This document shows, one piece after another, positions 31,924 to 45,391 of a stretch of 45,391 bases of DNA. The translations under genes and the position numbers were made by a program. The stretch is taken from positions 1-45,391 of the forward strand of contig CDMY01000597.1 of NCBI GenBank assembly GCA_001179505.1, written 5' to 3'. Every line of letters begins with the position of its first letter. The first letter of the stretch is position 1. The notes below the pieces were generated by a model. It was not told the DNA's origin, ran no database searches, and was given only the letters and a program-made list of their open reading frames with translations. The stretch comes from Vitrella brassicaformis CCMP3155 (lineage: Eukaryota > Protista > Chromerida).

Positions 31924-32190
31924 CGTCGCCGTGTTATTATTTCGTCCCGACTGGCCGTTGAGCATATATTTCAGTGCAAGTCTGGTCGACTCAACTGCAG
32001 AAGAGCCGTTCGATCATTCCATCGACAAAGGAGGGTTTGTCACGTCACTACACATGCCGTTTGCTGTCATGTCACTCTCGCCCAGGTACGATGGATGCAT
32101 CAACCAAAGATGGACACAGAAAAAACAAAACGCTGCACAGCCGGACGTCGGCAGTGAGACCTTCAGTCAGTCAGTAAATGAGTCAGTCAG

Positions 32191-35100
32191 TCAGCAGCCG
32201 CGGAGGTCGTAGCCATGTTTTCGCTTCTTGCGGCAGGGCGAGGGCGATCGTGATGCGGCGCCGTTGCCAGCAGGGGCCGCGGGAGCAGCCACAGCCCGCC
32301 CACCTGACACACAAGGCACACCCACCCCCCACACACACAGAGGTCTCTCTCTGTCCCCCTTAGCACCCAATGCCCCACTCAGTCAGTCAGTCGGTCAGAG
32401 AGTGTCGTACCTCCGTTGCCCCTCCGCCGCTTCTTGGGCGATTCCGGCACCGCCTCCTCCGACACGTTGTCCGTCTCAGGGCTGGCCGGGGGACAGGCCA
32501 TCTCAACGTCACCACCACCACCACCACCAGCACCCGACGAGCCACCACCACCAAGCCGCTTGGACCTGCGCCGCCTCCCCGCCGAGGGCTTCTTGGCGAT
32601 GGCCTTCGCCGAGGGCTTCTTGACGATCGCCTTGGGCTTCTTGACGATCGCCTTGAGCTTCTTGAGGATGGGTTTCTTGACGCGTCGTCCACTGGCAGCG
32701 GCGGGGGCGTGCGTGTGTGTGTGTTTGGGGCAGGTTGGTGCATGGCGGTTGATGCGGTGCTTCTTGTTGTCTTTGGTGACGGGCAGGTAGCCGAGCTGCT
32801 CGGAGGCACAGGCGAGGTGCATGCGGCTCTTGCAGCCTGAGGCATGGCAGCCTGCAGACAGACAGACAGACATAAACGACTCGTCTGGTGTGGTCTGGTG
32901 TGGTGGCTGGTGGGTTTGCTTACACTTGAGAGTCGCCCCGAGTTTCTTGCAGATGACGCACTTGTGCTTCCGCGCCTCCTTGATCGCACTCGCAGCATTG
33001 AACCACCTGACGCACGCCCAAGCAAGCACACACAAAGGCAGTCACTCGTGTGTGTGTGTGTGTGTGTGTGTGTGCCTGGATGTCTGTGTCTGTGTGTGTG
33101 CTGTCCGAACCGTGAGCCGTCAGTATTTGAGACACAGTGAGTGGACGAGTAGAGGCACTGCTCGTGGGCCATGTGGCGCTGGCCGTCGTCCGTCTCAAAC
33201 ACCCCCACCAGCGGACGCTCGAAGCTGCACACACCACCACCCACACGTGTGTGGAGAGTTCCATCCATCCACCGCTCGGTGGCTTACGTGTGCGCGCCGC
33301 CGCAGAATGAGCAGTTGAACTTGCCGTCCATGAGCCGCTGATGCTCACTGCAACATCCGCTCATCCAAATGGTTGGACTACCGAGCGTGTGTGCGTGTGT
33401 GTGTGCGTGTGCGTGTGCGTGTGTATGTGTCTCTCTACTTCACTTCCCCCCGCTGCCTTGCTCCCTCCCTCCCTCCCTCCCTCCCTCACGTGTGTGACAG
33501 CCCGGTGAGGGAGTCCTCCTTGCAGGTCTTGGCGTCGAACTCGGTCTTGGCGTCCACACCCGCGTCGATCCACTGCTCCCCACTGCCGTCGACGAACCAC
33601 TGCACACACCCCATTCCCAACACACACACACACACACAGACCGTGTGTGCTGAAGAGTGAGTGTGTGTGGCCCGGTGGGTCTGGTCTGTCTGCTCACCTT
33701 GTGCAGCCCCTGAGTGGAAGTGACGCCGCCTGCGATAGCGTCGATGATCCTCTGGGCCTCACGCACACCACTGTGGTAGGCCCCATGGACCGTGGCGGGG
33801 TAGTGCTTGCAGGTGTGCTCGCCTGTGGGCGAGTGTGGTTGTGGTGTGGGGAAATACACGAACACAATCCCGTAGGACTCTCTCTCTCTCTCCCTCTCTC
33901 TCTCTCTGTGCGGGTGTGTGTGGTTACCTGCGAAGAGGCATCTGCCAACGGGCATGGAGAGGAGGTCGTAGTCCAAGCAGGAGCTGCCGGGCGGGATGTA
34001 GGAGTAGCTGCCTGTGGGGTGGGTGGGTGAGGTGGACACACACGACAGACACACGGATATATGGGATAGATAGAGGGGTGCTTAGAGGGAGGGAGGGAGG
34101 GAGGGGAGGGGAGGGTGTGTGTGTGTGTGTGTGTGTTTCCCACCTCTGGCACGAATGTCCTGCCCCCATTTGGTCCGCATGAAGTGGGTCGGCTCGGGCA
34201 CCTTGACCTGTTTGCCGTACACCTTCCGCAACACCTGCACACACACACAGAGAGAGAGGTGGGCTGCACCGCACAGACCGCACCGTACCTGGAGGCACTG
34301 TTTCTTGAGCGTGTTGTCGTCCATGGCCTCACTCTTCTTGCCCAGCTCAGCCGGCAGCTGCACACACAACACACACACGTCGCCATGTGTGTGTGTGTGT
34401 GTGAGTGGACGACGCACACACACAATGAAGGCGTGGCGTACCAGTGCGAGGATGGCCGGCTTTGGGTGGCAGAGAATAAATTCGAAGAACCAGCCCTTCT
34501 CCTGGCCGCAGTAACCTGACGACACACACACGCACGCGTGCCCACGACCGAAGGCACAGGTACCTTACCTATGTGCCGCTTGGCGGTGGCTTGGTCCCAC
34601 CACACCTCGTCGAACACAAGCCACACCTTACAAACAACAACACAACACAACACACACACGCACAACTCAATCCAATCCGCCTCAGTCCATCCCATCTCAC
34701 CCACCCACCCACCCACCTTGTTGAGCAGTCCGACTCCCAGCCTGTCGATGGCCTCGGTCTTCCACTGAGGCAGCGGCGGCTCGTACGTCACCGTACCTGG
34801 AGGGAGGGAGGGAGGGAGGACAGGCACACCAGACACAACACAGCGACACACACATACGTCCCTTCCCTTTGTGTGTGTGTGCGTGTGTGTGTGTGTGTGT
34901 GTGCACCGTTGTCCTTGGCCCGTCTGGTGGGCGACTCCGATCGGTTGCTAGAGCCGCCTGTGGCGGCGGCCTCGACGGACTTCTTGAGCACGCCTAACAC
35001 ACACACACACACACACACAAAGGGACGGAGCACTCAGTCAGTACCCAGGAAGTGCGCAGGGTGTCCGTCTGGTACCCAGCGGGCAGGTGTCTATGACAAA

Positions 35101-35655
35101 GTCGAACTCCCCAATGGGCTCCAGCTGGCCGCTCTTGTACAAGAGCACCTTGTCGCCCACACGGCAGACCTTCCGGACGGCCACACCTGGCAGGCAGGCA
35201 GGCACCACACACAGACACAGACAGACAGACAGAGGGTATGGCTGTGTAGTGTGGTGTGGTGTGTGGTGTGGTGGAGGGATGGACGGTGTCGCGTCGCGCG
35301 TACCGAATTGGACGTCGACGCCCTCAGCGAGCTTCTCGGGGATTTTCTGGTAGCCGTCCTTGATCATGACGTGCGGGCCGGGGTAGGCCGTTTCATCGTC
35401 CTGGAGGACGATGTGTCAGGCAGGCATCAGACATCAGACACACACACGAATGTGTGCGGTGTGCGGTGTGCGCAGACACATTCACAACACAACACAGGCC
35501 GGCCGCTCGCTGCGCTGCGCTGCATTGTCTGTCACTTCACTTACGGCGTGCCACTGCTTGAGTGAGAGGGCTTTGTGGTCCGCGCCGGTGCTGTACTCGT
35601 CCTGGGACTCATGCCACTCCCACACACGGCGGGCAAGACCCTCCTCTGACACACA

Positions 35656-35690
<35 letters not shown>

Positions 35691-36765
35691 TGGCCGTGTG
35701 TGTGCTTCTGACGCACCCTACCCTTTGCTTTGTACTGCTCCATGGCCCCCCCTGTGGACAGCATGAGCTGCTCCGACATCGGCAGATCGCTCGCCGCCTC
35801 TTCGGCCTCCTGTAAGGTAGGTAAAGGTGTGACGGTCCCGTGTATCTATCGGGCTCCCACTGTGTGTGTCTGTGATGCTCTGCTCACGATCATGGCGTTG
35901 TCGTATTTCTCCTGGACCTCCCTGTGCTTGTCGGCGGGGATGGCGAAACCGTTGAAGTCCACCATGACTATGTTGTCGTCCTGCAACACCACACAGGCCG
36001 GCAGGTCAGGCTCAGGTCAGGTGCATGTGTGTGTGCTTCCCCCTCCCCTCCCCCTCCCCCCACCCCTCACTTACGCCTCGTTTGCTCTTGTCCATAACCT
36101 GCGCGTAGGTCTCGAGCTTGAACTGGTCCGCCAGCTTCTTGACCGGATTGCCGTCCACGCCGTGAATGAAGGACGCACCCTGTGATCCATCCATCCATCG
36201 TCCAACCAACGCCTCTCTCAGTGACTGACTCACCTGGTCGATGCCATTGACGCCGCCCGCGTCAACTGAGTGCACGCGGCCGCCTACTCGGTCCCGAGGC
36301 TCGAACACCTGCACACACGAACACACGGAGGAAAAATCCTTAATCTGTCTGTGTGGCCCAGCCCAGCCGTGTGGCCCTGCTCACTCACTCACCGTGACCT
36401 TGACGCCCTTCTTCCTCAGCTCTGACGCAGCCCTGCCAACACAGTCAGGTCAGAGCCATCCGCACACACAAGGGGTTACTGACTGACATGAATCTCGGGC
36501 GGTGTGCTCCCCTCCCCTCCCCTCCCGAGGCCCTGCCCTCTGCCTACCCCAGACCAGCCATCCCGGCGCCAAGAATGCCCACTCGGCAATCCGTGAAAAT
36601 TTTGTCGTGGGACGGCATCGATGAGGGGTTCTTCGCCTTCGCCTGCCCTCGAGTCTGCCCTCCACGCATCCTAGAAGGCGCGGCGGGGCTCTTTCCTCGC
36701 GCCATTCTTACTGCCCCAAGAGCTCGCGATGTGCGAGCTCGTCCTTTTTCGTCCCGTCGCGGCAT
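32191..36765 (-). CDS. LSD1/KDM1-like flavin amine oxidase with C-terminal extended PHD finger and Lys-rich tail
   Basis: Rossmann motif VGILGAGMAGLG|AA, FEPRDRVGGR, GASFIHG, GPHVMIKDGYQKIP, GVGLLNK|V, RG|SYSY, FA|GEHTCKHYPATVHGAYHSGVREA. Then CSFC..HEQC..CVIC..GATLK|CCHASGC..MHLAC..CPKH (zf-HC5HC2H pattern), KKP-rich repeats and PKKRRR. The start could be 36765 or a downstream Met (36705, 36669, 36618). Confidence 0.85.
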
Positions 36766-36783
36766 TCCACAAGAAGCGCTGCA

Positions 36784-38043
36784 ATGGCAGCTCAGTTCGG
36801 CTTGTGGTTTCCGTCCAAGAACGGTCGCGCAGAGAATCCGAGGTTCAGAGTCCTCTGCCTCCACAGCGCGGGAAGCGCCGAAACGGTACTTACGCAGACA
36901 GCAGACACCTCATTGCTTGCACTGTGGTGTGGTGTGTGTGGTGTGTGTGGTGTGTGTGGTGTGTGCAGATCTACACCAACAAGGGCAGCCCTCGGCGGCC
37001 GTACCCCAACCCCCTGCTGCAGTGGTGCATCGACAACGAGGTGGAGCTCCTTGCTGCACAGCTGCCCGGCAGACCGGGACCTCGCGCCAAGGAGCCAAGA
37101 ATCACGTCCGCACAGGAGGCCGCCAAACGCCTCTACGAGGTGCGGACGGATGGCAGCTGATGGCGGATTATGGCGGATGGGGATCTCTCTCTCTCTGTGT
37201 GTGTGTATGTGTGTGTGTGTGTGCAGGTGATGACTCCCCACTTTGCGGACGGCGTGTCGTATGCCATTGTGGGTCACTCGGTGGGGACGTGGATAGCCTT
37301 TGAGCTCTTGTGCCTCATCCGGGAGAAGCTGAAGCAGCAGGAGACCACCAGCACCACCACCCCTCAGGTGCCGCTGCCCAAGCACCTGTTCTTCTCCTGC
37401 ATGGTCGCCCCCGACTGGCCTGCCGACAAGAGGCCATGGCGGCAGAACAAAGACCTCAATGAGGAGCAGTTCAAAGAGGTGAAGCCGTGCCACTCACACA
37501 CACACTCACAGACAGACAGACAGACAGACAGTCACACAGACAGACAGACGGACAGACAGACAGACAGACGTACAAGACCACACGTGTCGGCTGGTGTGTG
37601 TGTGTGTTTAGGAGTGCGGTCACTGGGACGTCAACAAGGAGGTATTTGACATGTGGGATGTGTACGGTCCGCTGCTGAGGGACGACTTCACCATATTCGA
37701 CTGCTACACATTCACACACGACGGATGCCAACCCTTCGACATTCCCATCACCGCATGGTAGGTGTGGTCACCAACCACACACACATACACACGCGGCGCC
37801 CAATCCTCTCTCTCTTTCTGTGTGTGTGTGTGTGTGTGTAGGTATGCCAAGCGAGACCGCAAGATCAGCGAGGAGATGGTGTCAGCGTGGCAGCGGTTCG
37901 TCAAGAATTCCTCCAAGTTCACCCTCTCGTCCATCGACGGCCACCACCTGTTCGTCTACGACAGCGGCGCCCGCACAGCCTGGATGGACCAGATAGCCCA
38001 CAGGCTCGACCAGTGCCTGCTCGACGAGGAATACGGCTTCTAG
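36784..38043 (+). CDS. Stand-alone type II thioesterase (alpha/beta hydrolase, GrsT/OLAH-like)
   Basis: RVLCLHSAGSAET|IY, QLPGR, nucleophile motif GHSVG, LLRDDF, PFDIPITAW, His motif DGHHLF; TAG at 38041-38043. Confidence 0.85.
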
Positions 38044-39117: not shown

Positions 39118-42100
39118 TCAGTAGACGCGCTTCATGGGTGGGACGTGCTCCATCTCGCTGTCGAGGGGCTTGTCGCCCACCGGACGGTACCCGACGTTCA
39201 CCTGCAGCCATCACAACAGCCATCACGATTTATAAGTAAGAGGCTGTGCTGGGTGGGTAAAGGTGAGTTGTTTCTGTGTGACCTTGGCCTTCTCGACGTC
39301 CCTTGCTGTGAGCCATGTGAGGGTGTGCTTCATCCACGCCTTGTCGTCACGCTCCTGAACCAACCAAATAAGCAACACACACACACAGTGGATGGATGCT
39401 GTGTGGTGCTGTGTCTGTCTGTGTGTGTCTGTGTGTGTCTGTCGAACCAACCGGGAAGTCTTCCCTCGAGTGTGCGCCCCGTGACTCGCTGCGGTTCTCA
39501 GCGGCCACCATGGTCTGCGTGGCCTGGTTCAGCAGATTCTCCAGCTCCAACGTCTCTATCAGGTCCGTGTTCCTGATCATTGGTTGGACCAACAGATCAA
39601 CAAGAACGTCACAGCTCTCTCCTGCCTGCTGTGTGGGGATGTGATGTTTGTATTATGTGTCTTGCTGACTGACTGACTGACCATACAGAGCTCTTGTCCT
39701 TGACGCTGACGCTCTCGAAGTCCTTCATCACGCCATACATCTTGTCCACACCTGACGGACAGACACACACCGCCAAACGACAAGTGAGTGAAGTGTGTGT
39801 CGGTGCCCCCCTCCCTCCCTCCCTCCCCGGCTAACCGACCATCTTTGAGCGAGGGTCCGTCCCTGAAGACGGCGGCGTGGTTCTGCATGATCTTCTGCAT
39901 CTTGGTGCGGATCTGTGCGGTGGTCTGGTCCCCCTTGGCGTGTCGAATCTTGTCCAGACGCGCCAGCGTCTCCTCGCCGGCATTCTTGGGCAGATCTACC
40001 GGCTTGGCGTCTGACGTACGTGCATTGCGATCAGACAGATCAATCAGGCGTTGGTGCAGGTGAGATGAGGTGTCTGTCTATCCGTCTGCTTGTCTGTCTA
40101 CACACACTGCCTACTCGGCTTCATCTTCTCGGAGATGGTCTCAGCGGCAGTGCGTCCGAACACCTAGAGACACCACACCGCACAGACAGACAAGGACAGG
40201 TGAGGTGCGCACAGCACAGCCACTGCACCACCCACCCCACTGGCACGCACCACAATGTCGAGCAGCGAGTTGGCCCCCAGCCTGTTGGCGCCGTGTACGC
40301 TGGCACATGCGGCCTCGCCGGCGGCGAGGAGGCCGGGTACGATAGAGTCCTTGCCGTCCTTGTCAGTGTTGAGCACCTCGGCCCTCCAATTGGTGGGGAC
40401 GCCCCCCATATTGTAGTGCACCGTCGGCAGCACCGGGATCGGCTCCTGCAGTGTGGAGGCAGTGGACAGACAGACAGACAGACAGACAGGACAGATAGGC
40501 AGCACATGTGGTGTGGTGTGGTGTGGTGTGTGTGTCGGTTTGGTTCTTGCCTTGGTGACATCGACGCCGGCGAAGATGTGAGCGGTTTCCGAGATGCCCG
40601 GGAGTCGCTCCTTGAGTGTTTCTGGGGGCAGGTGGCTGAGGTCCAGGTGGATGTGGTCCTTCTCGGCACCCACCCCACGGCCCTCGCGGATCTCGATCGT
40701 CATCGAACGGCTCACAACATCGCGACTCGCCAAATCCTTGGCAGTGGGGGCGTAGCGAGCCATGAAGGCCTCACCCTGGATGGCCATACCATACACACAC
40801 ACGCAAAGCAAAGAGAGAGAGGAACATTTGCCCGTCCGTCTGTTGGCTGGTGTAGTGTAGGTGTGTGTTAGTGACGTCACCTCTGAGTTTCTGAGGATGC
40901 CTCCCTCGCCCCTGCACCCCTCAGTCATGAGGCAGCCGGCAGGGAAGATGCCCGTCGGGTGGAACTGAACGAACTCCAAATCCTCCATCGGCAGACCAGC
41001 ACTGACACACACACACACACCGCGGCCGACACCCCATGCCATGTGTGTGTGTGTGTGCGGCATTAGCACCCACCCACCGTGAGACCATGGCGCCTCCGTC
41101 TCCGGTGCATGTGTGTGCGGATGTGCAGGACTGGTAGGCCCGTCCGTATCCGCCCGTGGCGAGCACTGTCTGGTGGGCGCCGAAGCGGTGGATGGAGCCG
41201 TCCTCCATGCTCATCGCCACCACGCCCTTGCACACCCCCTTGTCCATGAGCAGATCCAAAGCAAAATACTCGACGAAGAACGTGCAGTCGTAGTTGAGCG
41301 ACTGACAGACCGACAGACCCACATGTGTGGTGCACCACAGCATCACAGTATTGTGTGTGTGATAATGAGAGAGGGATGTACCTTGTTTACCTGTCCGTAG
41401 AGAGTGTGAAGCATAGCGTGTCCCGTGCGGTCGGCCGCCGCTGCGCACCTGTAGGCCTGACCGCCCTTGCCGAACTTCAACGACTGACCACCAAAGGCAC
41501 GCTGGTAGATCTTGCCTAAAACACACACACACACAGACACTCGTGCACCCATCTCATCTATGTGGCTGTGTCTGCCTGCCGAGTCGTGTTTCGTCAGTGA
41601 CCATCTTTGGTCCTAGAGAAGGGCAGTCCGTATGACTCGAGCTCGAGAACGGCCTTGGGGGCCTCGCGGCACATGTGCTGGATGGCGTCCTGGTCGCCCA
41701 GCCAGTCGGCACCCTTGATGGTGTCGTAGGCGTGCCACCGCCAGTCATCCTCAGTCATGTTGCCCAAAGCAGCGTTGATGCCACCCTGACAAGGTTGACC
41801 AACACACACACACACACACACTCGGACACAGGTGAGGTGAGATGGGGTGGGGTGAGGTGAGGAGGTGCGTGCCCTGCCCTGCACACCTGTGCGGCGACGG
41901 TGTGCGATCGTGTGGGGAAGAGCTTGGAGATGCAGGCCGTGTTGAAGCCCTTCTCCGCCAGACCGAAGGCGGCACGCAGGCCCGCGCCGCCCGCACCCAC
42001 CACCACGGCATCGAACCGGTGGTCGATTATCTTGTACGCTGGAGAAACACACAAACAAAACACCACATCCCCATCCACACATGACATGCGCAGAGAGCAC

Positions 42101-42589: not shown

Positions 42590-45391
42590 ATGGCCGGTCA
42601 GCTGGACTTGCGGGGAGAGCACAGCCGTTCGCATCCCGTGTTGCTGCCCGACCTCTCCCCGCACACGCCATACGCACCGCGGACCATCTCGGACCTGGTG
42701 CTGCTCGAGCAGGTCGCAAAGGCTGAGGTCGAGAAGGATGAAGAGCTTGAAGACGAGGCTGCTGAGCTCGAGGGGCCCGGCAAGCCTGTCACCTGGAATG
42801 CACTCTTTCAATCGGTACCAGACAGACATTCACTCCATAATGGGATGGATGGGTGGAGCTGACTGACTGTTTGTTTCTGCCTGCAGGTCACGAACGTGTC
42901 GTCAGCGGTGGATTACCACGAGACGACTCACCGGATGCCCATGCGGACGCCGTCTGGTCGGCTGGTCAAGGCGATCCCCATCCCCTCCTACATCCGCCTC
43001 AACCTCGACCCGCACTACAACGTGTGCGCCTCGCAGAGCGAGGAGGTCGTGCTCGCCGCACGGGTAAGTAAAGAGCTACCTGACCGACCTGACTCCCCAG
43101 CCACACACACGCAGGATTTGTGTGTGTCGATGAGTCGATGGTTGGGTGCTCTCTCTGTGCAGACGGTGCAGAAGCTGCTTGCGTTGCGTGACAAGTGGAA
43201 CATCCGGTACCCCGACGTCGAGCCCAACACCGTCGTACCTGCCATGCCACAGCCACTCGGACAAGTGAGCGAGCGTCAAGACTTGAGCTGACCCCCGACC
43301 CGACCACACTGACATCCATCCATCCGCGGTGCCTGCCTCTTTCTTCACCTTGTTCGTTCGTTCGTTGGTCAGGGTTCCAACGAGCCCATCTTCAACCCGA
43401 GTGGTTGTGACATGCTGCCCCCGATCGACGCCGTCGTGTCGTTCGAGCGGGGCATCTTCCAGGTCTACTGGGAACCAAACACTGCGGCGGCCGCCGTGGC
43501 ACTGACCGTCGAGGGCAACGGCAATGGCAATGGGCAGGTGGACCCCATCACACCGGGATTCGGACCACAGGTGGACCAGTATGACGACACAGGTCAGCTC
43601 AGCGACGATTGCCCACAAACAGACAGACAGATGGGCACTCGTCAAAGGGCACGTGTGTATGTGTGTGCAGACGAGGGTGGTCCACAGGAGACGGCCACGA
43701 CCGATCAGCAGCCCCCGGTGAATCTGACAGAGGAGGCGGCCAACGGTCCGGTCCCCCCGGCGCCCGGCAGGCCGCCTCTGCTGTACGCCCACCGGCCCAT
43801 CCCCCCGGTCGAGGACTACCTCGCTGACCTCAAAGAGATCATGCAGGCCGTCCAAAACCCAGGCACGGTGGCACCCGGACACACACACCATCCGGCCGTC
43901 ATTTGGTATGTGTGTGTGTGTGTCAGTGTGCAAGACGTTTGCTTGGCGTCGGTTGCGTTATCTGGAGAGTCAGTTCAACATGCACCTGATGTTCAACTCG
44001 CAGGCCGAGCAGCAGGAGAGCAAAGAGACCCACCACAGGGACTTCTACAACGTTCGCAAAGTCGACACACACATACACCACTCTGGTGGGTGCGCCATCC
44101 TTCTACCCACCCCAGACACAGCCAGGCCACATGCCCCTCCCTCCCTCCCTCCCTGTGTGTCAGCCTGCATGCATCAGAAGCACCTCCTTCGCTTCATTCG
44201 AAAGAAGTACCGTTGTGAGGCAGACACGGTGGTGGCCAAGTCGCCGGGTGGCAAGGACCTGACTCTCCGTGACATCTTTGCTGAGGAGGTCGGATTCTCT
44301 GCGTACGAGGCGTCGACGGACCACCTGGCGGTGCAGGCCATGGGGTCGTGCTTCCAGCGGTTCGACCTCTTCAACAACAAGTACAATCCCTTTGAGAAGA
44401 AGACACTCAGGGACGTCTTCCTCAAGACAGACAACTTCATCGACGGTAGGGAGGGAGCCACTGACTGAACTGACTGATGGGGGGCGCCGTGGCACAGAGA
44501 GCGGTCTAGACACTCTCTCTCTGTCTCTCTCTCTCTGTGGGGGGNNNNNNNNNNNNNNNNNNNNNNNNNNNNNNNNNNNNNNNNNNNNNNNNNNNNNNNN
44601 NNNNNNNNNNNNNNNNNNNNNNNNNNNNNNNNNNNNNNNNNNNNNNNNNNNNNNNNNNNNNNNNNNNNNNNNNNNNNNNNNNNNNNNNNNNNNNNNNNNN
44701 NNNNNNNNNNNNNNNNNNNNNNNNNNNNNNNNNNNNNNNNNNNNNNNNNNNNNNNNNNNNNNNNNNNNNNNNNNNNNNNNNNNNNNNNNNNNNNNNNNNN
44801 NNNNNNNNNNNNNNNNNNNNNNNNNNNNNNNNNNNNNNNNNNNNGCGGTCGGTCGGTATGGAGAGAGAGACAGATAGGGGCAGACACGTCTGTGTGTGTG
44901 TGTGTGTGCCAGGTGCGGTGGATGATCCAGGTGCCCCGGTTGTTTGGGCTCTACAAGAAGATGGGCGTCGTCAACACATTCGCCGACATGCTCAGGAACA
45001 TCTTCCAGTGAGGGAGGGAGCCACACACCAGACCAACACACACAGCCACACAGACAGCAGGACACTACACTCGTATGTATGTTGTCAACCTTGATTCTAG
45101 GCCCGTGTTCGAGGCGGTCGTCAACCCAGAAGCCAACCGGGACGTCTTCATGGCGCTCCACCAGGTCAGACAGACAGACAGACGGACATGCCGCTCGGTG
45201 TGTGTTTGTGTTGTCCACCCATCCATCCATCCATCGATTCATCCATCCACATGTGCAGGTGACTGGCTGGGACTCAGTCGACGACGAGTCGGTCATGTCA
45301 AAGTTCACCACCGAGGGCGGTGAGCTGCCCGACCCTGAGGACTGGACGCAGCCACACAACCCGCCATACTCATACTGGTCAGTCAGTCAGT
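42590..45391 (+). CDS. AMPD: AMP deaminase (3' end beyond window; spans assembly gap)
   Basis: KTFAWRRLRYLESQFNMHLMFN, HRDFYNVRKVDTHIHHS|ACMHQKHLLRFI, FQRFDLFNNKYNP, VFLKTDNFIDG, GWDSVDDES, DWTQPHNPPYSYW. Confidence 0.95.
44545..44844. other. Assembly gap (300 N) inside the AMP deaminase gene
   Basis: Run of N. At least one AMPD exon may be hidden here. Confidence 0.99.

What the first reader, a model, noticed from the sequence alone, without database searches (positions are those of the whole stretch)
32191..36765. SWIRM-less LSD1-like demethylase carrying its own extended PHD reader and an H1-like tail
Seen: only about 60 aa precede the FAD-binding motif, leaving no room for SWIRM, and there is no long Tower insertion. 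The oxidase keeps LSD1-like motifs (LLNKV catalytic Lys, GSYSY, GEHT..YPATVHGA..SG.REA). It is followed by a C2HC plus PHD extended finger, KAIVKKP repeats and basic NLS-like clusters. Known: canonical KDM1 proteins need SWIRM, and ePHD fingers occur in MLL, JMJD2, BRPF and PHF6 as chromatin or nucleic-acid binders. Inference: an undescribed architecture, either a histone demethylase with a different targeting module or a chromatin-tethered polyamine oxidase.
Basis: partly seen in the sequence, partly recalled or inferred. Interest (0 to 1): 0.75.

Follow-up and report, generated by a model that had tools for sequence, protein, structure and literature searches.

The report
SWIRM-less LSD1-like oxidase with ePHD
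A real, expressed gene of the alga Vitrella brassicaformis joins an LSD1-like flavin amine oxidase that has no SWIRM or Tower domain to an extended PHD zinc finger and a basic tail; this rare layout is shared by a few other protists, and whether it acts on histones or polyamines is still open.

Summary
A 23-exon minus-strand gene (36705→32191) encodes about 818 aa. One spliced transcript contig covers all exons, and its length fits my model exactly.

The product equals the public protein CEM25339.1 / A0A0G4G9H8 of Vitrella brassicaformis, apart from the choice of start codon.

Its parts are:
- a short N-terminus of about 45 aa;
- a complete amine-oxidase domain;
- a 12-ligand extended PHD finger (ePHD);
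- a disordered lysine-rich tail with two NLS-like clusters.

There is no SWIRM or Tower domain, and there is no room for an upstream exon.

The oxidase is closest to KDM1A (239 bits). KDM1B scores 169 and maize polyamine oxidase 130. FAD-binding residues, the catalytic Lys and the W-x2-DD-x7-H substrate loop are kept. However, it lies outside the SWIRM-bearing clade and keeps the polyamine-oxidase "[WF]-I-H-G" histidine.

The layout is rare but not unique. Nephromyces, one EukProt transcript, one metagenomic cluster and one Logan transcript share it. I found no paper describing it.

My best reading is a chromatin-tethered KDM1-type demethylase (about 0.45). The main rival is a nuclear polyamine oxidase (about 0.3). 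Earlier notes of this scan report AP2–amine-oxidase fusions elsewhere in this genome.

The parts
32191..36705 (-). Coding sequence, 23 exons, 818 aa plus stop. Exons (high-low): 36705-36548, 36432-36393, 36308-36234, 36179-36075, 35980-35888, 35809-35722, 35645-35545, 35400-35304, 35186-35076, 34993-34907, 34796-34717, 34626-34569, 34515-34442, 34357-34289, 34234-34144, 34011-33928, 33822-33698, 33599-33490, 33347-33288, 33224-33111, 33006-32924, 32851-32411, 32303-32191
   Evidence: Model built; all introns are GT..AG. The spliced length from 36711 to 32100 is 2554 nt, which equals the span of transcript contig X7 record 9. Fourteen of the 22 joints are listed outright, table 5. The rest lie at skipped repeats but fit the record coordinates. 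The model is identical to public protein P0001 from residue 13 onwards.
36763..36765 (-).
   Evidence: No transcript contig reaches it. The longest ends at 36711. The public model starts at the ATG at 36669-36667.
33743..36561 (-). Flavin amine-oxidase domain (P0001 37-485), exons 1-17, with no Tower insertion
   Evidence: Pfam Amino_oxidase 3e-72. PDB sequence search: KDM1A 8e-70, KDM1B 1e-48, maize PAO 1e-36. AF2 pLDDT is above 90 over about 25-490, and Foldseek matches LSD1 and LSD2 first.
36432..36570 (-). FAD dinucleotide-binding motif GAGMAGLG, split by intron 1
   Evidence: G285, G287 and G290 and E308, R310 and R316 equivalents are conserved.
36159..36170 (-). F-I-H-G motif (H85 of P0001), at the position of LSD1 V-V-T-G (T335)
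   Evidence: His occupies this position in 25 of the 28 rows outside the SWIRM clade, including all five AO-ePHD rows. In the SWIRM clade it is Thr, or Met in one fungal row.
35371..35553 (-). Substrate-loop motif W-x2-D-D-x7-H (W206, D209, D210, H218), equivalent to LSD1 W552, D555, D556, H564; split by intron 7
34717..34719 (-). Codon of the catalytic lysine (K333 of P0001, equivalent to LSD1 K661), the last codon of exon 11
   Evidence: The PDB alignment of exon 11 ends on LSD1 residue 661.
34795..34979 (-). About 25-aa low-complexity insertion after LGVLKK (absent from LSD1; longer in Nephromyces); spans intron 10
   Evidence: pLDDT dips to 56.
33490..33599 (-). Linker exon 18 between the oxidase and the zinc finger
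   Evidence: Present in the transcript contigs next to exons 17 and 19. Partly conserved with Nephromyces. Low pLDDT.
32721..33313 (-). Extended PHD finger (C549 to H666 of P0001): C2HC pre-PHD plus C4HC2H, exons 19-22
   Evidence: Pfam zf-HC5HC2H above its cut-off. Eleven of the 12 zinc ligands are invariant in all seven ePHD copies of the family. The last His is missing only from the cut-off second copy of P0161. The model's nearest folds are PHF6 ePHD2, PHF7 ePHD and the BRPF1/JADE1/AF10 PZP domains.
32556..32687 (-). Lysine-rich repeats (KAIVKKP x2, KAIAKKP) followed by an RRRR cluster
   Evidence: Predicted disordered. Not conserved in relatives.
32421..32438 (-). NLS-like cluster PKKRRR
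   Evidence: the NLS role is inferred.
32215..32232 (-). NLS-like cluster RKKRKH in the last exon
   Evidence: the NLS role is inferred.
32100..32190 (-). 3' untranslated region.
   Evidence: X7 record 9 runs to position 2702 while 32100 corresponds to position 2554.

Best explanation
Shown. This is one expressed gene of Vitrella brassicaformis. Its protein has an intact FAD amine-oxidase domain of the KDM1 (LSD1) superfamily, without SWIRM or Tower. A roughly 50-aa linker follows, then a stand-alone extended PHD finger binding three zinc ions, then a disordered lysine/arginine-rich tail. It belongs to a small conserved oxidase-ePHD (AO-ePHD) family that also occurs in the apicomplexan Nephromyces and in three further protist or metagenomic lineages.

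Inferred. The basic clusters take the protein into the nucleus. The ePHD, helped by the basic tail, docks on a histone tail or on DNA, as other ePHDs do. This brings the oxidase to chromatin. There the flavin oxidises the amine of a mono- or dimethyl-lysine on a basic tail, most plausibly the N-terminus of H3. The resulting imine hydrolyses to release formaldehyde, and O2 reoxidises FAD to give H2O2. In this reading the cis ePHD supplies the targeting that SWIRM, Tower/CoREST and the BHC80 PHD finger supply for KDM1A, or the N-terminal zinc fingers for KDM1B.

My odds:
- real fused gene: 0.97
- nuclear and chromatin-bound: about 0.75
- methyl-lysine demethylase: about 0.45
For: - The gene and the fusion are supported.
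- By sequence the oxidase is far closer to KDM1A than to KDM1B or to polyamine oxidases (239, 169 and 130 bits). Exons 11 and 17 hit KDM1A first.
- The model's best structural matches are LSD1 and LSD2, the latter with rmsd 2.1 Å over 480 columns.
- FAD-binding residues and the K661, W751, Y761 and E801 equivalents are intact.
- It shares the H-x-A-N-L-E-[FY] helix with SWIRM-type LSD1s, though Vitrella itself is degenerate there. It also shares the W-D-x-D-D-x7-H loop and that loop's two extra residues. Bacterial and PAO-type relatives lack both features.
- D555, D556 and H564 are listed among the key residues of the LSD1 substrate region (PMC10821146).
- The ePHD is conserved at every zinc ligand across five lineages and folds like histone- or DNA-binding ePHDs.
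- Related SWIRM-less oxidases are fused to other chromatin or DNA modules: a homeodomain and DEK_C.
- Monophyly of the AO-ePHD group is not rejected (AU p = 0.30).
Against: - There is no SWIRM, which every characterised KDM1 enzyme has. There is also no Tower.
- The SWIRM-bearing clade (99/96 support) excludes the AO-ePHD proteins. Grouping them with bacterial and plant PAO2-like oxidases is not rejected either.
- The protein keeps the [WF]-I-H-G motif. Its His is described as highly conserved in polyamine oxidases and part of the active-site hydrogen-bond network (PMC9355956, PMC3517346). SWIRM-type LSD1s have Thr at that position.
- W695 is replaced by Ile.
- In Vitrella itself D553 is His, N535 is Gln, and the D375 and E379 equivalents are His and Gln.
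- The ligand of the ePHD is unknown. Localisation and activity are untested.
- KDM1B and plant LDL sequences were not in my tree.
Confidence: 0.45

Rival explanations
1. It is a nuclear, chromatin-tethered polyamine oxidase. The ePHD and basic tail hold the enzyme on chromatin, where it oxidises spermine, spermidine or their acetylated forms bound to DNA.
For: - The [WF]-I-H-G histidine of polyamine oxidases is retained in all AO-ePHD proteins (PMC9355956 and PMC3517346).
- W695 of LSD1 is absent.
- The family lies outside the SWIRM clade. A grouping with bacterial and plant PAO2-like oxidases costs only 2.7 lnL (AU p = 0.19).
- The Nephromyces ortholog is named 'polyamine oxidase' by its depositors, and the nearest Atlas feature clusters are plant PAO2-like.
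Against: - Sequence scores to solved polyamine and spermine oxidases are about 100 bits lower than to KDM1A.
- The LSD1-type W-D-x-D-D-x7-H loop and its two-residue insertion are present, while bacterial and PAO rows lack them.
- The database name is automatic and untested.
- I know of no polyamine oxidase that carries a histone or DNA reader; this last point is from memory, not a test.
Confidence: 0.3
2. It is a chromatin-bound amine oxidase acting on another nuclear substrate, for example methyl-lysine on non-histone proteins or on a histone site other than H3K4.
For: - Several residues of the substrate cavity differ from both LSD1 and PAO.
- Vitrella's copy is the most divergent of the family in the H-x-A-N-L-E-Y helix.
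- Earlier scan notes report several other amine-oxidase fusions with AP2 modules in this genome, which suggests a diversified enzyme set (not checked here).
Against: There is no positive evidence for any particular substrate. The acidic D-D pair argues for a basic, tail-like or polyamine-like substrate.
Confidence: 0.15
3. It is a catalytically dead scaffold that only reads chromatin.
For: Some cavity residues have changed in Vitrella.
Against: GxGxxG, E308, R310, R316, K661, W751, Y761 and E801 equivalents and the GEHT..HGA motif are all conserved across the family.
Confidence: 0.05
4. It is a gene-model artefact: two neighbouring genes (an oxidase and a PHD protein) wrongly joined.
For: None was found. 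The linker is poorly conserved and has low model confidence.
Against: Single spliced contigs from several runs cross exons 17 to 23. Four other lineages have the same order of domains in one ORF, two of them on intron-free contigs.
Confidence: 0.02

Closest known systems
KDM1A / LSD1 (human; PDB 2V1D, 6VYP and others)
   Same: It is the best sequence and fold match of the oxidase domain (239 bits; Foldseek 4e-41). FAD-binding residues, catalytic Lys661, Y761, W751, the W552/D555/D556/H564 loop and the YPATVHGA motif are conserved.
   Different: - No SWIRM and no Tower, so no CoREST-type partner site.
- T335 is His, W695 is Ile, D553 is His.
- It falls outside the SWIRM-bearing clade.
- It carries a C-terminal ePHD and a basic tail instead.
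KDM1B / LSD2 (PDB 4FWE, 4HSU)
   Same: It is Tower-less, and zinc-finger modules sit in the same polypeptide as the oxidase. It gives the best superposition with the model (rmsd about 2.1 Å over 480 columns).
   Different: LSD2 has a SWIRM domain, and its zinc fingers (C4H2C2 and CW types; recalled, not tested here) are N-terminal and of other families. Its sequence score is lower (169 bits).
Stand-alone ePHD fingers of PHF6 (4NN2) and PHF7 (8JWS), and the ePHD half of the BRPF1/JADE1/AF10 PZP domains
   Same: Same zinc-ligand pattern (C2HC + C4HC2H), same Pfam family (zf-HC5HC2H) and the nearest folds to the model.
   Different: No preceding PHD1 finger as in PZP domains. The ligand is unknown. 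Here the finger is fused to an amine oxidase.
Polyamine oxidases (maize PAO 1B37, human SMOX 7OXL, mouse PAOX 5LAE, plant PAO2-like)
   Same: Same fold, the same catalytic Lys, and the [WF]-x-H-G active-site histidine.
   Different: Scores are about 100 bits lower. They lack the LSD1-type D-D loop with its insertion, and they have no chromatin modules.
Other SWIRM-less LSD1-like fusions seen here: oxidase + homeodomain (P0158, P0159, P0171, P0182), a labyrinthulid 'LSD1-like 1' (P0163), and an oxidase + DEK_C cluster in green algae
   Same: They have the same grade of oxidase (the I-H-G histidine together with the LSD1-type D-D loop), joined to a DNA or chromatin module in place of SWIRM.
   Different: The partner domains differ, and these proteins form separate clades in the tree.

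Membership tests
KDM1 / LSD1 histone demethylases | FAD amine-oxidase-like domain most similar to KDM1 enzymes | tested here: met
   KDM1A 8e-70, KDM1B 1e-48, PAO 1e-36; Foldseek ranks LSD1 and LSD2 first.
KDM1 / LSD1 histone demethylases | Catalytic Lys661 and FAD-binding residues | tested here: met
   K333, GxGxxG, and the E308, R310, R316, W751, Y761 and E801 equivalents are conserved.
KDM1 / LSD1 histone demethylases | SWIRM domain N-terminal to the oxidase | tested here: not met
   Pfam finds no SWIRM in P0001 or in any of the four relatives. Only about 33-45 aa precede GxGxxG. The transcript ends at 36711, next to a divergent gene.
KDM1 / LSD1 histone demethylases | Tower insertion (KDM1A subtype only; the CoREST-binding site) | tested here: not met
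   The alignment to LSD1 leaves no insertion between query residues 151 and 179. The model has only short helices there.
KDM1 / LSD1 histone demethylases | Placement inside the clade of SWIRM-bearing enzymes | tested here: not met
   The SWIRM clade has 99/96 support and excludes all AO-ePHD rows. A sister position is not rejected (AU p = 0.12). KDM1B and plant LDL were not sampled.
KDM1 / LSD1 histone demethylases | LSD1-type substrate-pocket residues | tested here: inconclusive
   W552, D555, D556, H564, L659, P808 and A809 are kept. T335 is His, W695 is Ile, D553 is His, N535 is Gln, F538 is Tyr and A539 is Ser.
KDM1 / LSD1 histone demethylases | Demethylation of H3K4me1/2 (or another methyl-lysine) | not testable with these tools
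   Needs an enzyme assay.
Polyamine oxidases (PAO / SMOX / PAOX) | Conserved active-site W-x-H motif (His64 of mouse PAOX) | tested here: met
   F-I-H-G in Vitrella and W-I-H-G in the four relatives. The column is shared with the PAO rows. The role of the His is from PMC9355956 and PMC3517346. Equivalence of the column is by motif alignment.
Polyamine oxidases (PAO / SMOX / PAOX) | Closest overall similarity to characterised polyamine oxidases | tested here: not met
   Maize PAO scores 130 bits, SMOX 122 and PAOX 98, against 239 for KDM1A.
Extended PHD finger (zf-HC5HC2H, PF13771) | C2HC + C4HC2H zinc-ligand pattern | tested here: met
   All 12 ligands are present. Eleven are invariant in all seven copies from five proteins; the last His is missing only from the truncated second copy of P0161.
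Extended PHD finger (zf-HC5HC2H, PF13771) | Pfam score above the gathering threshold | tested here: met
   30.1 bits against a cut-off of 29.1 in Vitrella; 36.6-64.3 bits in the relatives.
Extended PHD finger (zf-HC5HC2H, PF13771) | ePHD fold | tested here: met
   AF2 model with pLDDT 74. Foldseek matches PHF6 ePHD2 (1e-4, TM 0.67 by target), PHF7, and the BRPF1, JADE1 and AF10 PZP domains.
PZP module (PHD1 - Zn knuckle - ePHD) | A canonical PHD1 finger before the ePHD | tested here: not met
   Pfam finds no PHD domain. Only a 50-aa low-confidence linker lies between the oxidase and the first CxxC.
Linker histone H1 | Winged-helix globular domain, or a true H1 C-terminal tail | tested here: not met
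   No Linker_histone hit. The tail is a short Lys/Ala/Pro-rich disordered stretch that is not conserved in relatives. The likeness is compositional only.

The most novel reading that the evidence does not exclude
The oxidase-ePHD family may be a SWIRM-independent lineage of histone demethylases. It would be a 'stem KDM1' grade that combines a polyamine-oxidase-like histidine with the LSD1-type D-D loop. In it a cis ePHD would take over the substrate presentation done by SWIRM, Tower/CoREST and BHC80. This would show that SWIRM is not needed for KDM1-type histone demethylation. It would also show that chromerids and some apicomplexans target demethylation through built-in readers, in parallel with the AP2-oxidase fusions that this scan noted elsewhere in the genome.
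Probability: 0.25. Interest if true: 0.7.

Novelty: new variant of a known kind. Interest (0 to 1): 0.45.

Why it matters
All characterised KDM1 demethylases pair the oxidase with a SWIRM domain and depend on partner modules to reach nucleosomes. A conserved natural protein that lacks SWIRM and Tower but carries its own histone/DNA-type reader is a ready-made test of two questions:
- Is SWIRM needed for catalysis?
- How did the histone demethylase arise from polyamine-type oxidases?

The protein sits in the free-living relatives of apicomplexan parasites and has an ortholog in the apicomplexan Nephromyces. It may therefore also bear on chromatin regulation in that group.

If the enzyme proves to be a polyamine oxidase, a chromatin-tethered one would itself be unusual.

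Tried and rejected
- My first PDB search with exon 17 used the wrong frame and found nothing. I repeated it in frame.
- Exon 7 alone gave no PDB hit.
- A word search restricted to the linker plus ePHD (residues 495-675) found only the protein itself. That tool cannot judge the spread of the ePHD half.
- Ten literature searches found no description of this architecture. These covered LSD1 with PHD, apicomplexa, Toxoplasma, Plasmodium and chromerids, plus Nephromyces polyamine oxidase, 'lacks the SWIRM' and GILJ00000000. Subscription papers are not covered.
- I could not identify the source organisms of P0035 (EukProt GILJ01007818), P0036/P0153 (ENA; JGI 3300052690) or P0161 (Logan SRR7970041).
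- The tree backbone stayed unresolved. AU tests rejected none of three groupings: AO-ePHD monophyly, AO-ePHD with the SWIRM clade, and AO-ePHD with the bacterial/PAO2 clade.
- KDM1B, plant LDL and proteins longer than 1410 aa (typical of Toxoplasma and Plasmodium) could not be sampled with the searches left.
- Pfam did not confirm the + strand neighbour as a thioesterase. It gave only a weak lipid-droplet hydrolase hit around a GHSVG elbow.
- I rejected the upstream SWIRM exon, separate transcripts and a pseudo-enzyme. The reasons are given under the rival explanations.


Full report
**1. The gene**

Reading the minus strand of 32100-36950 gave a 23-exon model with GT..AG introns of 53-144 nt, many filled with (CA)n/(GT)n runs. 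It encodes 818 aa from the ATG at 36705 to the stop at 32191.

Public runs hold spliced copies. In one search, contig X7 record 9 (2702 nt), X8 record 10 and X1 record 1 lie on the exons only. Fourteen introns are listed outright as CT..AC skips on the + strand. In X7 record 9 the stretch from 36711 to 32100 occupies exactly 2554 nt. That is the spliced length my model predicts. The oxidase exons, the linker exon and the zinc-finger exons are therefore on one mRNA.

That contig ends at 36711, six bases above the ATG at 36705. Contigs of a + strand gene end at 36778 and 36783. The two genes are head to head with at most about 66 bp between the contig ends. The next minus-strand gene upstream (about 40164-42097) is a succinate-dehydrogenase-type flavoprotein. 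There is no place for an upstream SWIRM exon.

**2. Identity**

The joined model was put together in a local script only, to check frame and length.

Exon 17 found P0001 at 100% identity. P0001 is CEM25339.1 / UniProt A0A0G4G9H8, 'Amine oxidase domain-containing protein' of Vitrella brassicaformis CCMP3155. It equals my model from its 13th residue onwards. All later whole-protein work used this database entry.

**3. Domains**

Pfam gives Amino_oxidase at 37-485 (3e-72), NAD_binding_8, zf-HC5HC2H at 577-666 (30.1 bits, cut-off 29.1), and no SWIRM.

The AF2 model is confident (pLDDT above 90) over about 25-490 and moderate (63-88) over about 545-650. It is disordered at 1-14, in the linker, and from 695 to the end.

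The alignment to human LSD1 shows no Tower. It does show a 25-aa low-complexity insertion after LGVLKK.

The tail has KAIVKKP-type repeats and the clusters PKKRRR and RKKRKH. It is not conserved in relatives and has no linker-histone domain. 'H1-like' is therefore only compositional.

**4. What the oxidase resembles**

Against solved structures, KDM1A scores 239 bits (8e-70) and KDM1B 169. Maize PAO scores 130, SMOX 122, PAOX 98 and MAO-B 88. Exons 11 and 17 on their own also hit KDM1A first, and exon 11 ends on Lys661. Foldseek ranks LSD1 and LSD2 first, with LSD2 at rmsd about 2.1 Å over 480 columns. Maize PAO appears at rank 50.

In an alignment of 45 oxidase domains, the FAD-binding and catalytic positions are all kept. 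These are GxGxxG, E308, R310, R316, K661, W751, Y761 and E801.

Two sets of characters point in opposite directions.

- Towards LSD1. The AO-ePHD proteins share the W-D-x-D-D-x7-H loop with SWIRM-type LSD1s, including two residues that bacterial and PAO rows lack. Most of them also share the H-x-A-N-L-E-[FY] helix. D555, D556 and H564 are among the residues named as key to the LSD1 substrate region (PMC10821146).
- Towards polyamine oxidases. They keep [WF]-I-H-G where every member of the SWIRM clade has [VI]-[VI]-T-G (Met in one fungal row). This histidine is described as highly conserved in polyamine oxidases and as part of the active-site hydrogen-bond network (PMC9355956, PMC3517346). W695 is also absent. 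Vitrella itself has further changes: D553 to His, N535 to Gln, and the D375 and E379 equivalents to His and Gln.

**5. Phylogeny**

The careful tree used 45 rows and 433 columns under LG+C20+F+G4. The main results are:

- The SWIRM-bearing clade has 99/96 support and excludes the AO-ePHD rows.
- A clade of bacterial oxidases plus a plant PAO2-like protein has 98/93 support.
- A homeodomain-fused clade has 100/100 support.
- Vitrella pairs with Nephromyces (80/98).
- The backbone is open.

AU tests rejected none of three groupings:

| Grouping tested | p-AU |
|---|---|
| AO-ePHD monophyly | 0.30 |
| AO-ePHD with the SWIRM clade | 0.12 |
| AO-ePHD with the bacterial/PAO2 clade | 0.19 |

KDM1B and plant LDL could not be included. 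The stand-alone relatives are bacterial: a Chloroflexota MAG and an Anaerolineaceae MAG.

**6. The zinc finger**

The region from C549 to H666 has the full C2HC + C4HC2H pattern. All 12 ligands are present in every complete copy. Eleven are invariant in all seven ePHD copies of the five proteins.

By sequence it is nearest to the BRPF1 PZP domain, PHF7 and PHF6. A separate model (pLDDT 74) matches PHF6 ePHD2, PHF7 ePHD and the BRPF1, JADE1 and AF10 PZP domains. Atlas look-alikes are PHF6, PHF7, G2E3 and KMT2C ePHDs.

No PHD1 finger precedes it. It is a stand-alone ePHD, and its ligand cannot be read from sequence.

**7. Spread**

The same order of domains (oxidase then ePHD, no SWIRM) occurs in four other proteins:

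- P0034, Nephromyces sp. MMRI, named 'polyamine oxidase';
- P0035, a EukProt transcript of 1105 aa;
- P0036/P0153, an ENA and JGI metagenome cluster;
- P0161, a Logan transcript with two ePHDs.

No Atlas cluster of 50 or more members has this layout. The layout is conserved but rare.

The search saw only proteins of 443-1410 aa. Long apicomplexan orthologs could have been missed.

Other SWIRM-less relatives carry a homeodomain or DEK_C. Some SWIRM-bearing ones add ARID or SRI. Earlier notes of this scan report several AP2-amine-oxidase fusions elsewhere in the Vitrella genome (not checked here).

I found no paper on the oxidase-ePHD layout in ten searches.

**8. Reading**

The gene and the fusion are shown. 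Nuclear, chromatin-bound action is inferred from the ePHD, the basic clusters and the company such oxidases keep.

The substrate is open. I put about 0.45 on methyl-lysine demethylation of a histone tail, about 0.30 on polyamine oxidation at chromatin and about 0.15 on another nuclear amine. The remainder goes to a dead enzyme or an artefact.

Noticed in passing
window 36711-36784: The oxidase gene and a + strand gene (ATG at 36784, GHSVG alpha/beta-hydrolase elbow further on) are head to head. Their transcript contigs end only about 66 bp apart, so the bidirectional promoter is very short or the 5' ends overlap.
   Followed up: partly
window 33105-33110 (intron 20 donor): The donor site reads GTTCGG, far from the usual GTRAGT of the other introns. 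Even so, the transcript contigs use it.
   Followed up: partly
window 32100-36950, introns: Most introns are 53-144 nt and are filled with (CA)n/(GT)n or (GA)n microsatellites. The reads tool skipped 13 such places as repeats.
   Followed up: no
window about 39300-42100, minus strand: A multi-exon gene for a succinate dehydrogenase / fumarate reductase-type flavoprotein (Pfam FAD_binding_2, 1.6e-46).
   Followed up: partly
window about 44540-44870: The translations show a run of unknown bases (X), which marks an assembly gap near the end of the window.
   Followed up: no
P0035 about 115-160, P0036 about 45-80, P0161 about 60-90: Three of the oxidase-ePHD relatives share a short beta-rich N-terminal motif (aromatic-x-V ... 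[FY]-x-G-x-L) ahead of the oxidase. Vitrella and the N-terminally incomplete Nephromyces protein do not show it. Pfam gave no name for it.
   Followed up: no
P0158, P0159, P0171, P0182 (metagenomic/Logan proteins): LSD1-like oxidases without SWIRM that end in a homeodomain. They form a tight clade (100/100), and I found no description of them.
   Followed up: partly
L001 (Chloroflexota MAG), L002 (Anaerolineaceae MAG), P0077: Bacterial stand-alone oxidases of about 430-480 aa carry LSD1-like motifs (LLNKV, YPATVHGA). P0077 begins with a twin-arginine/lipoprotein-like signal. In the tree they group with a plant PAO2-like protein.
   Followed up: partly
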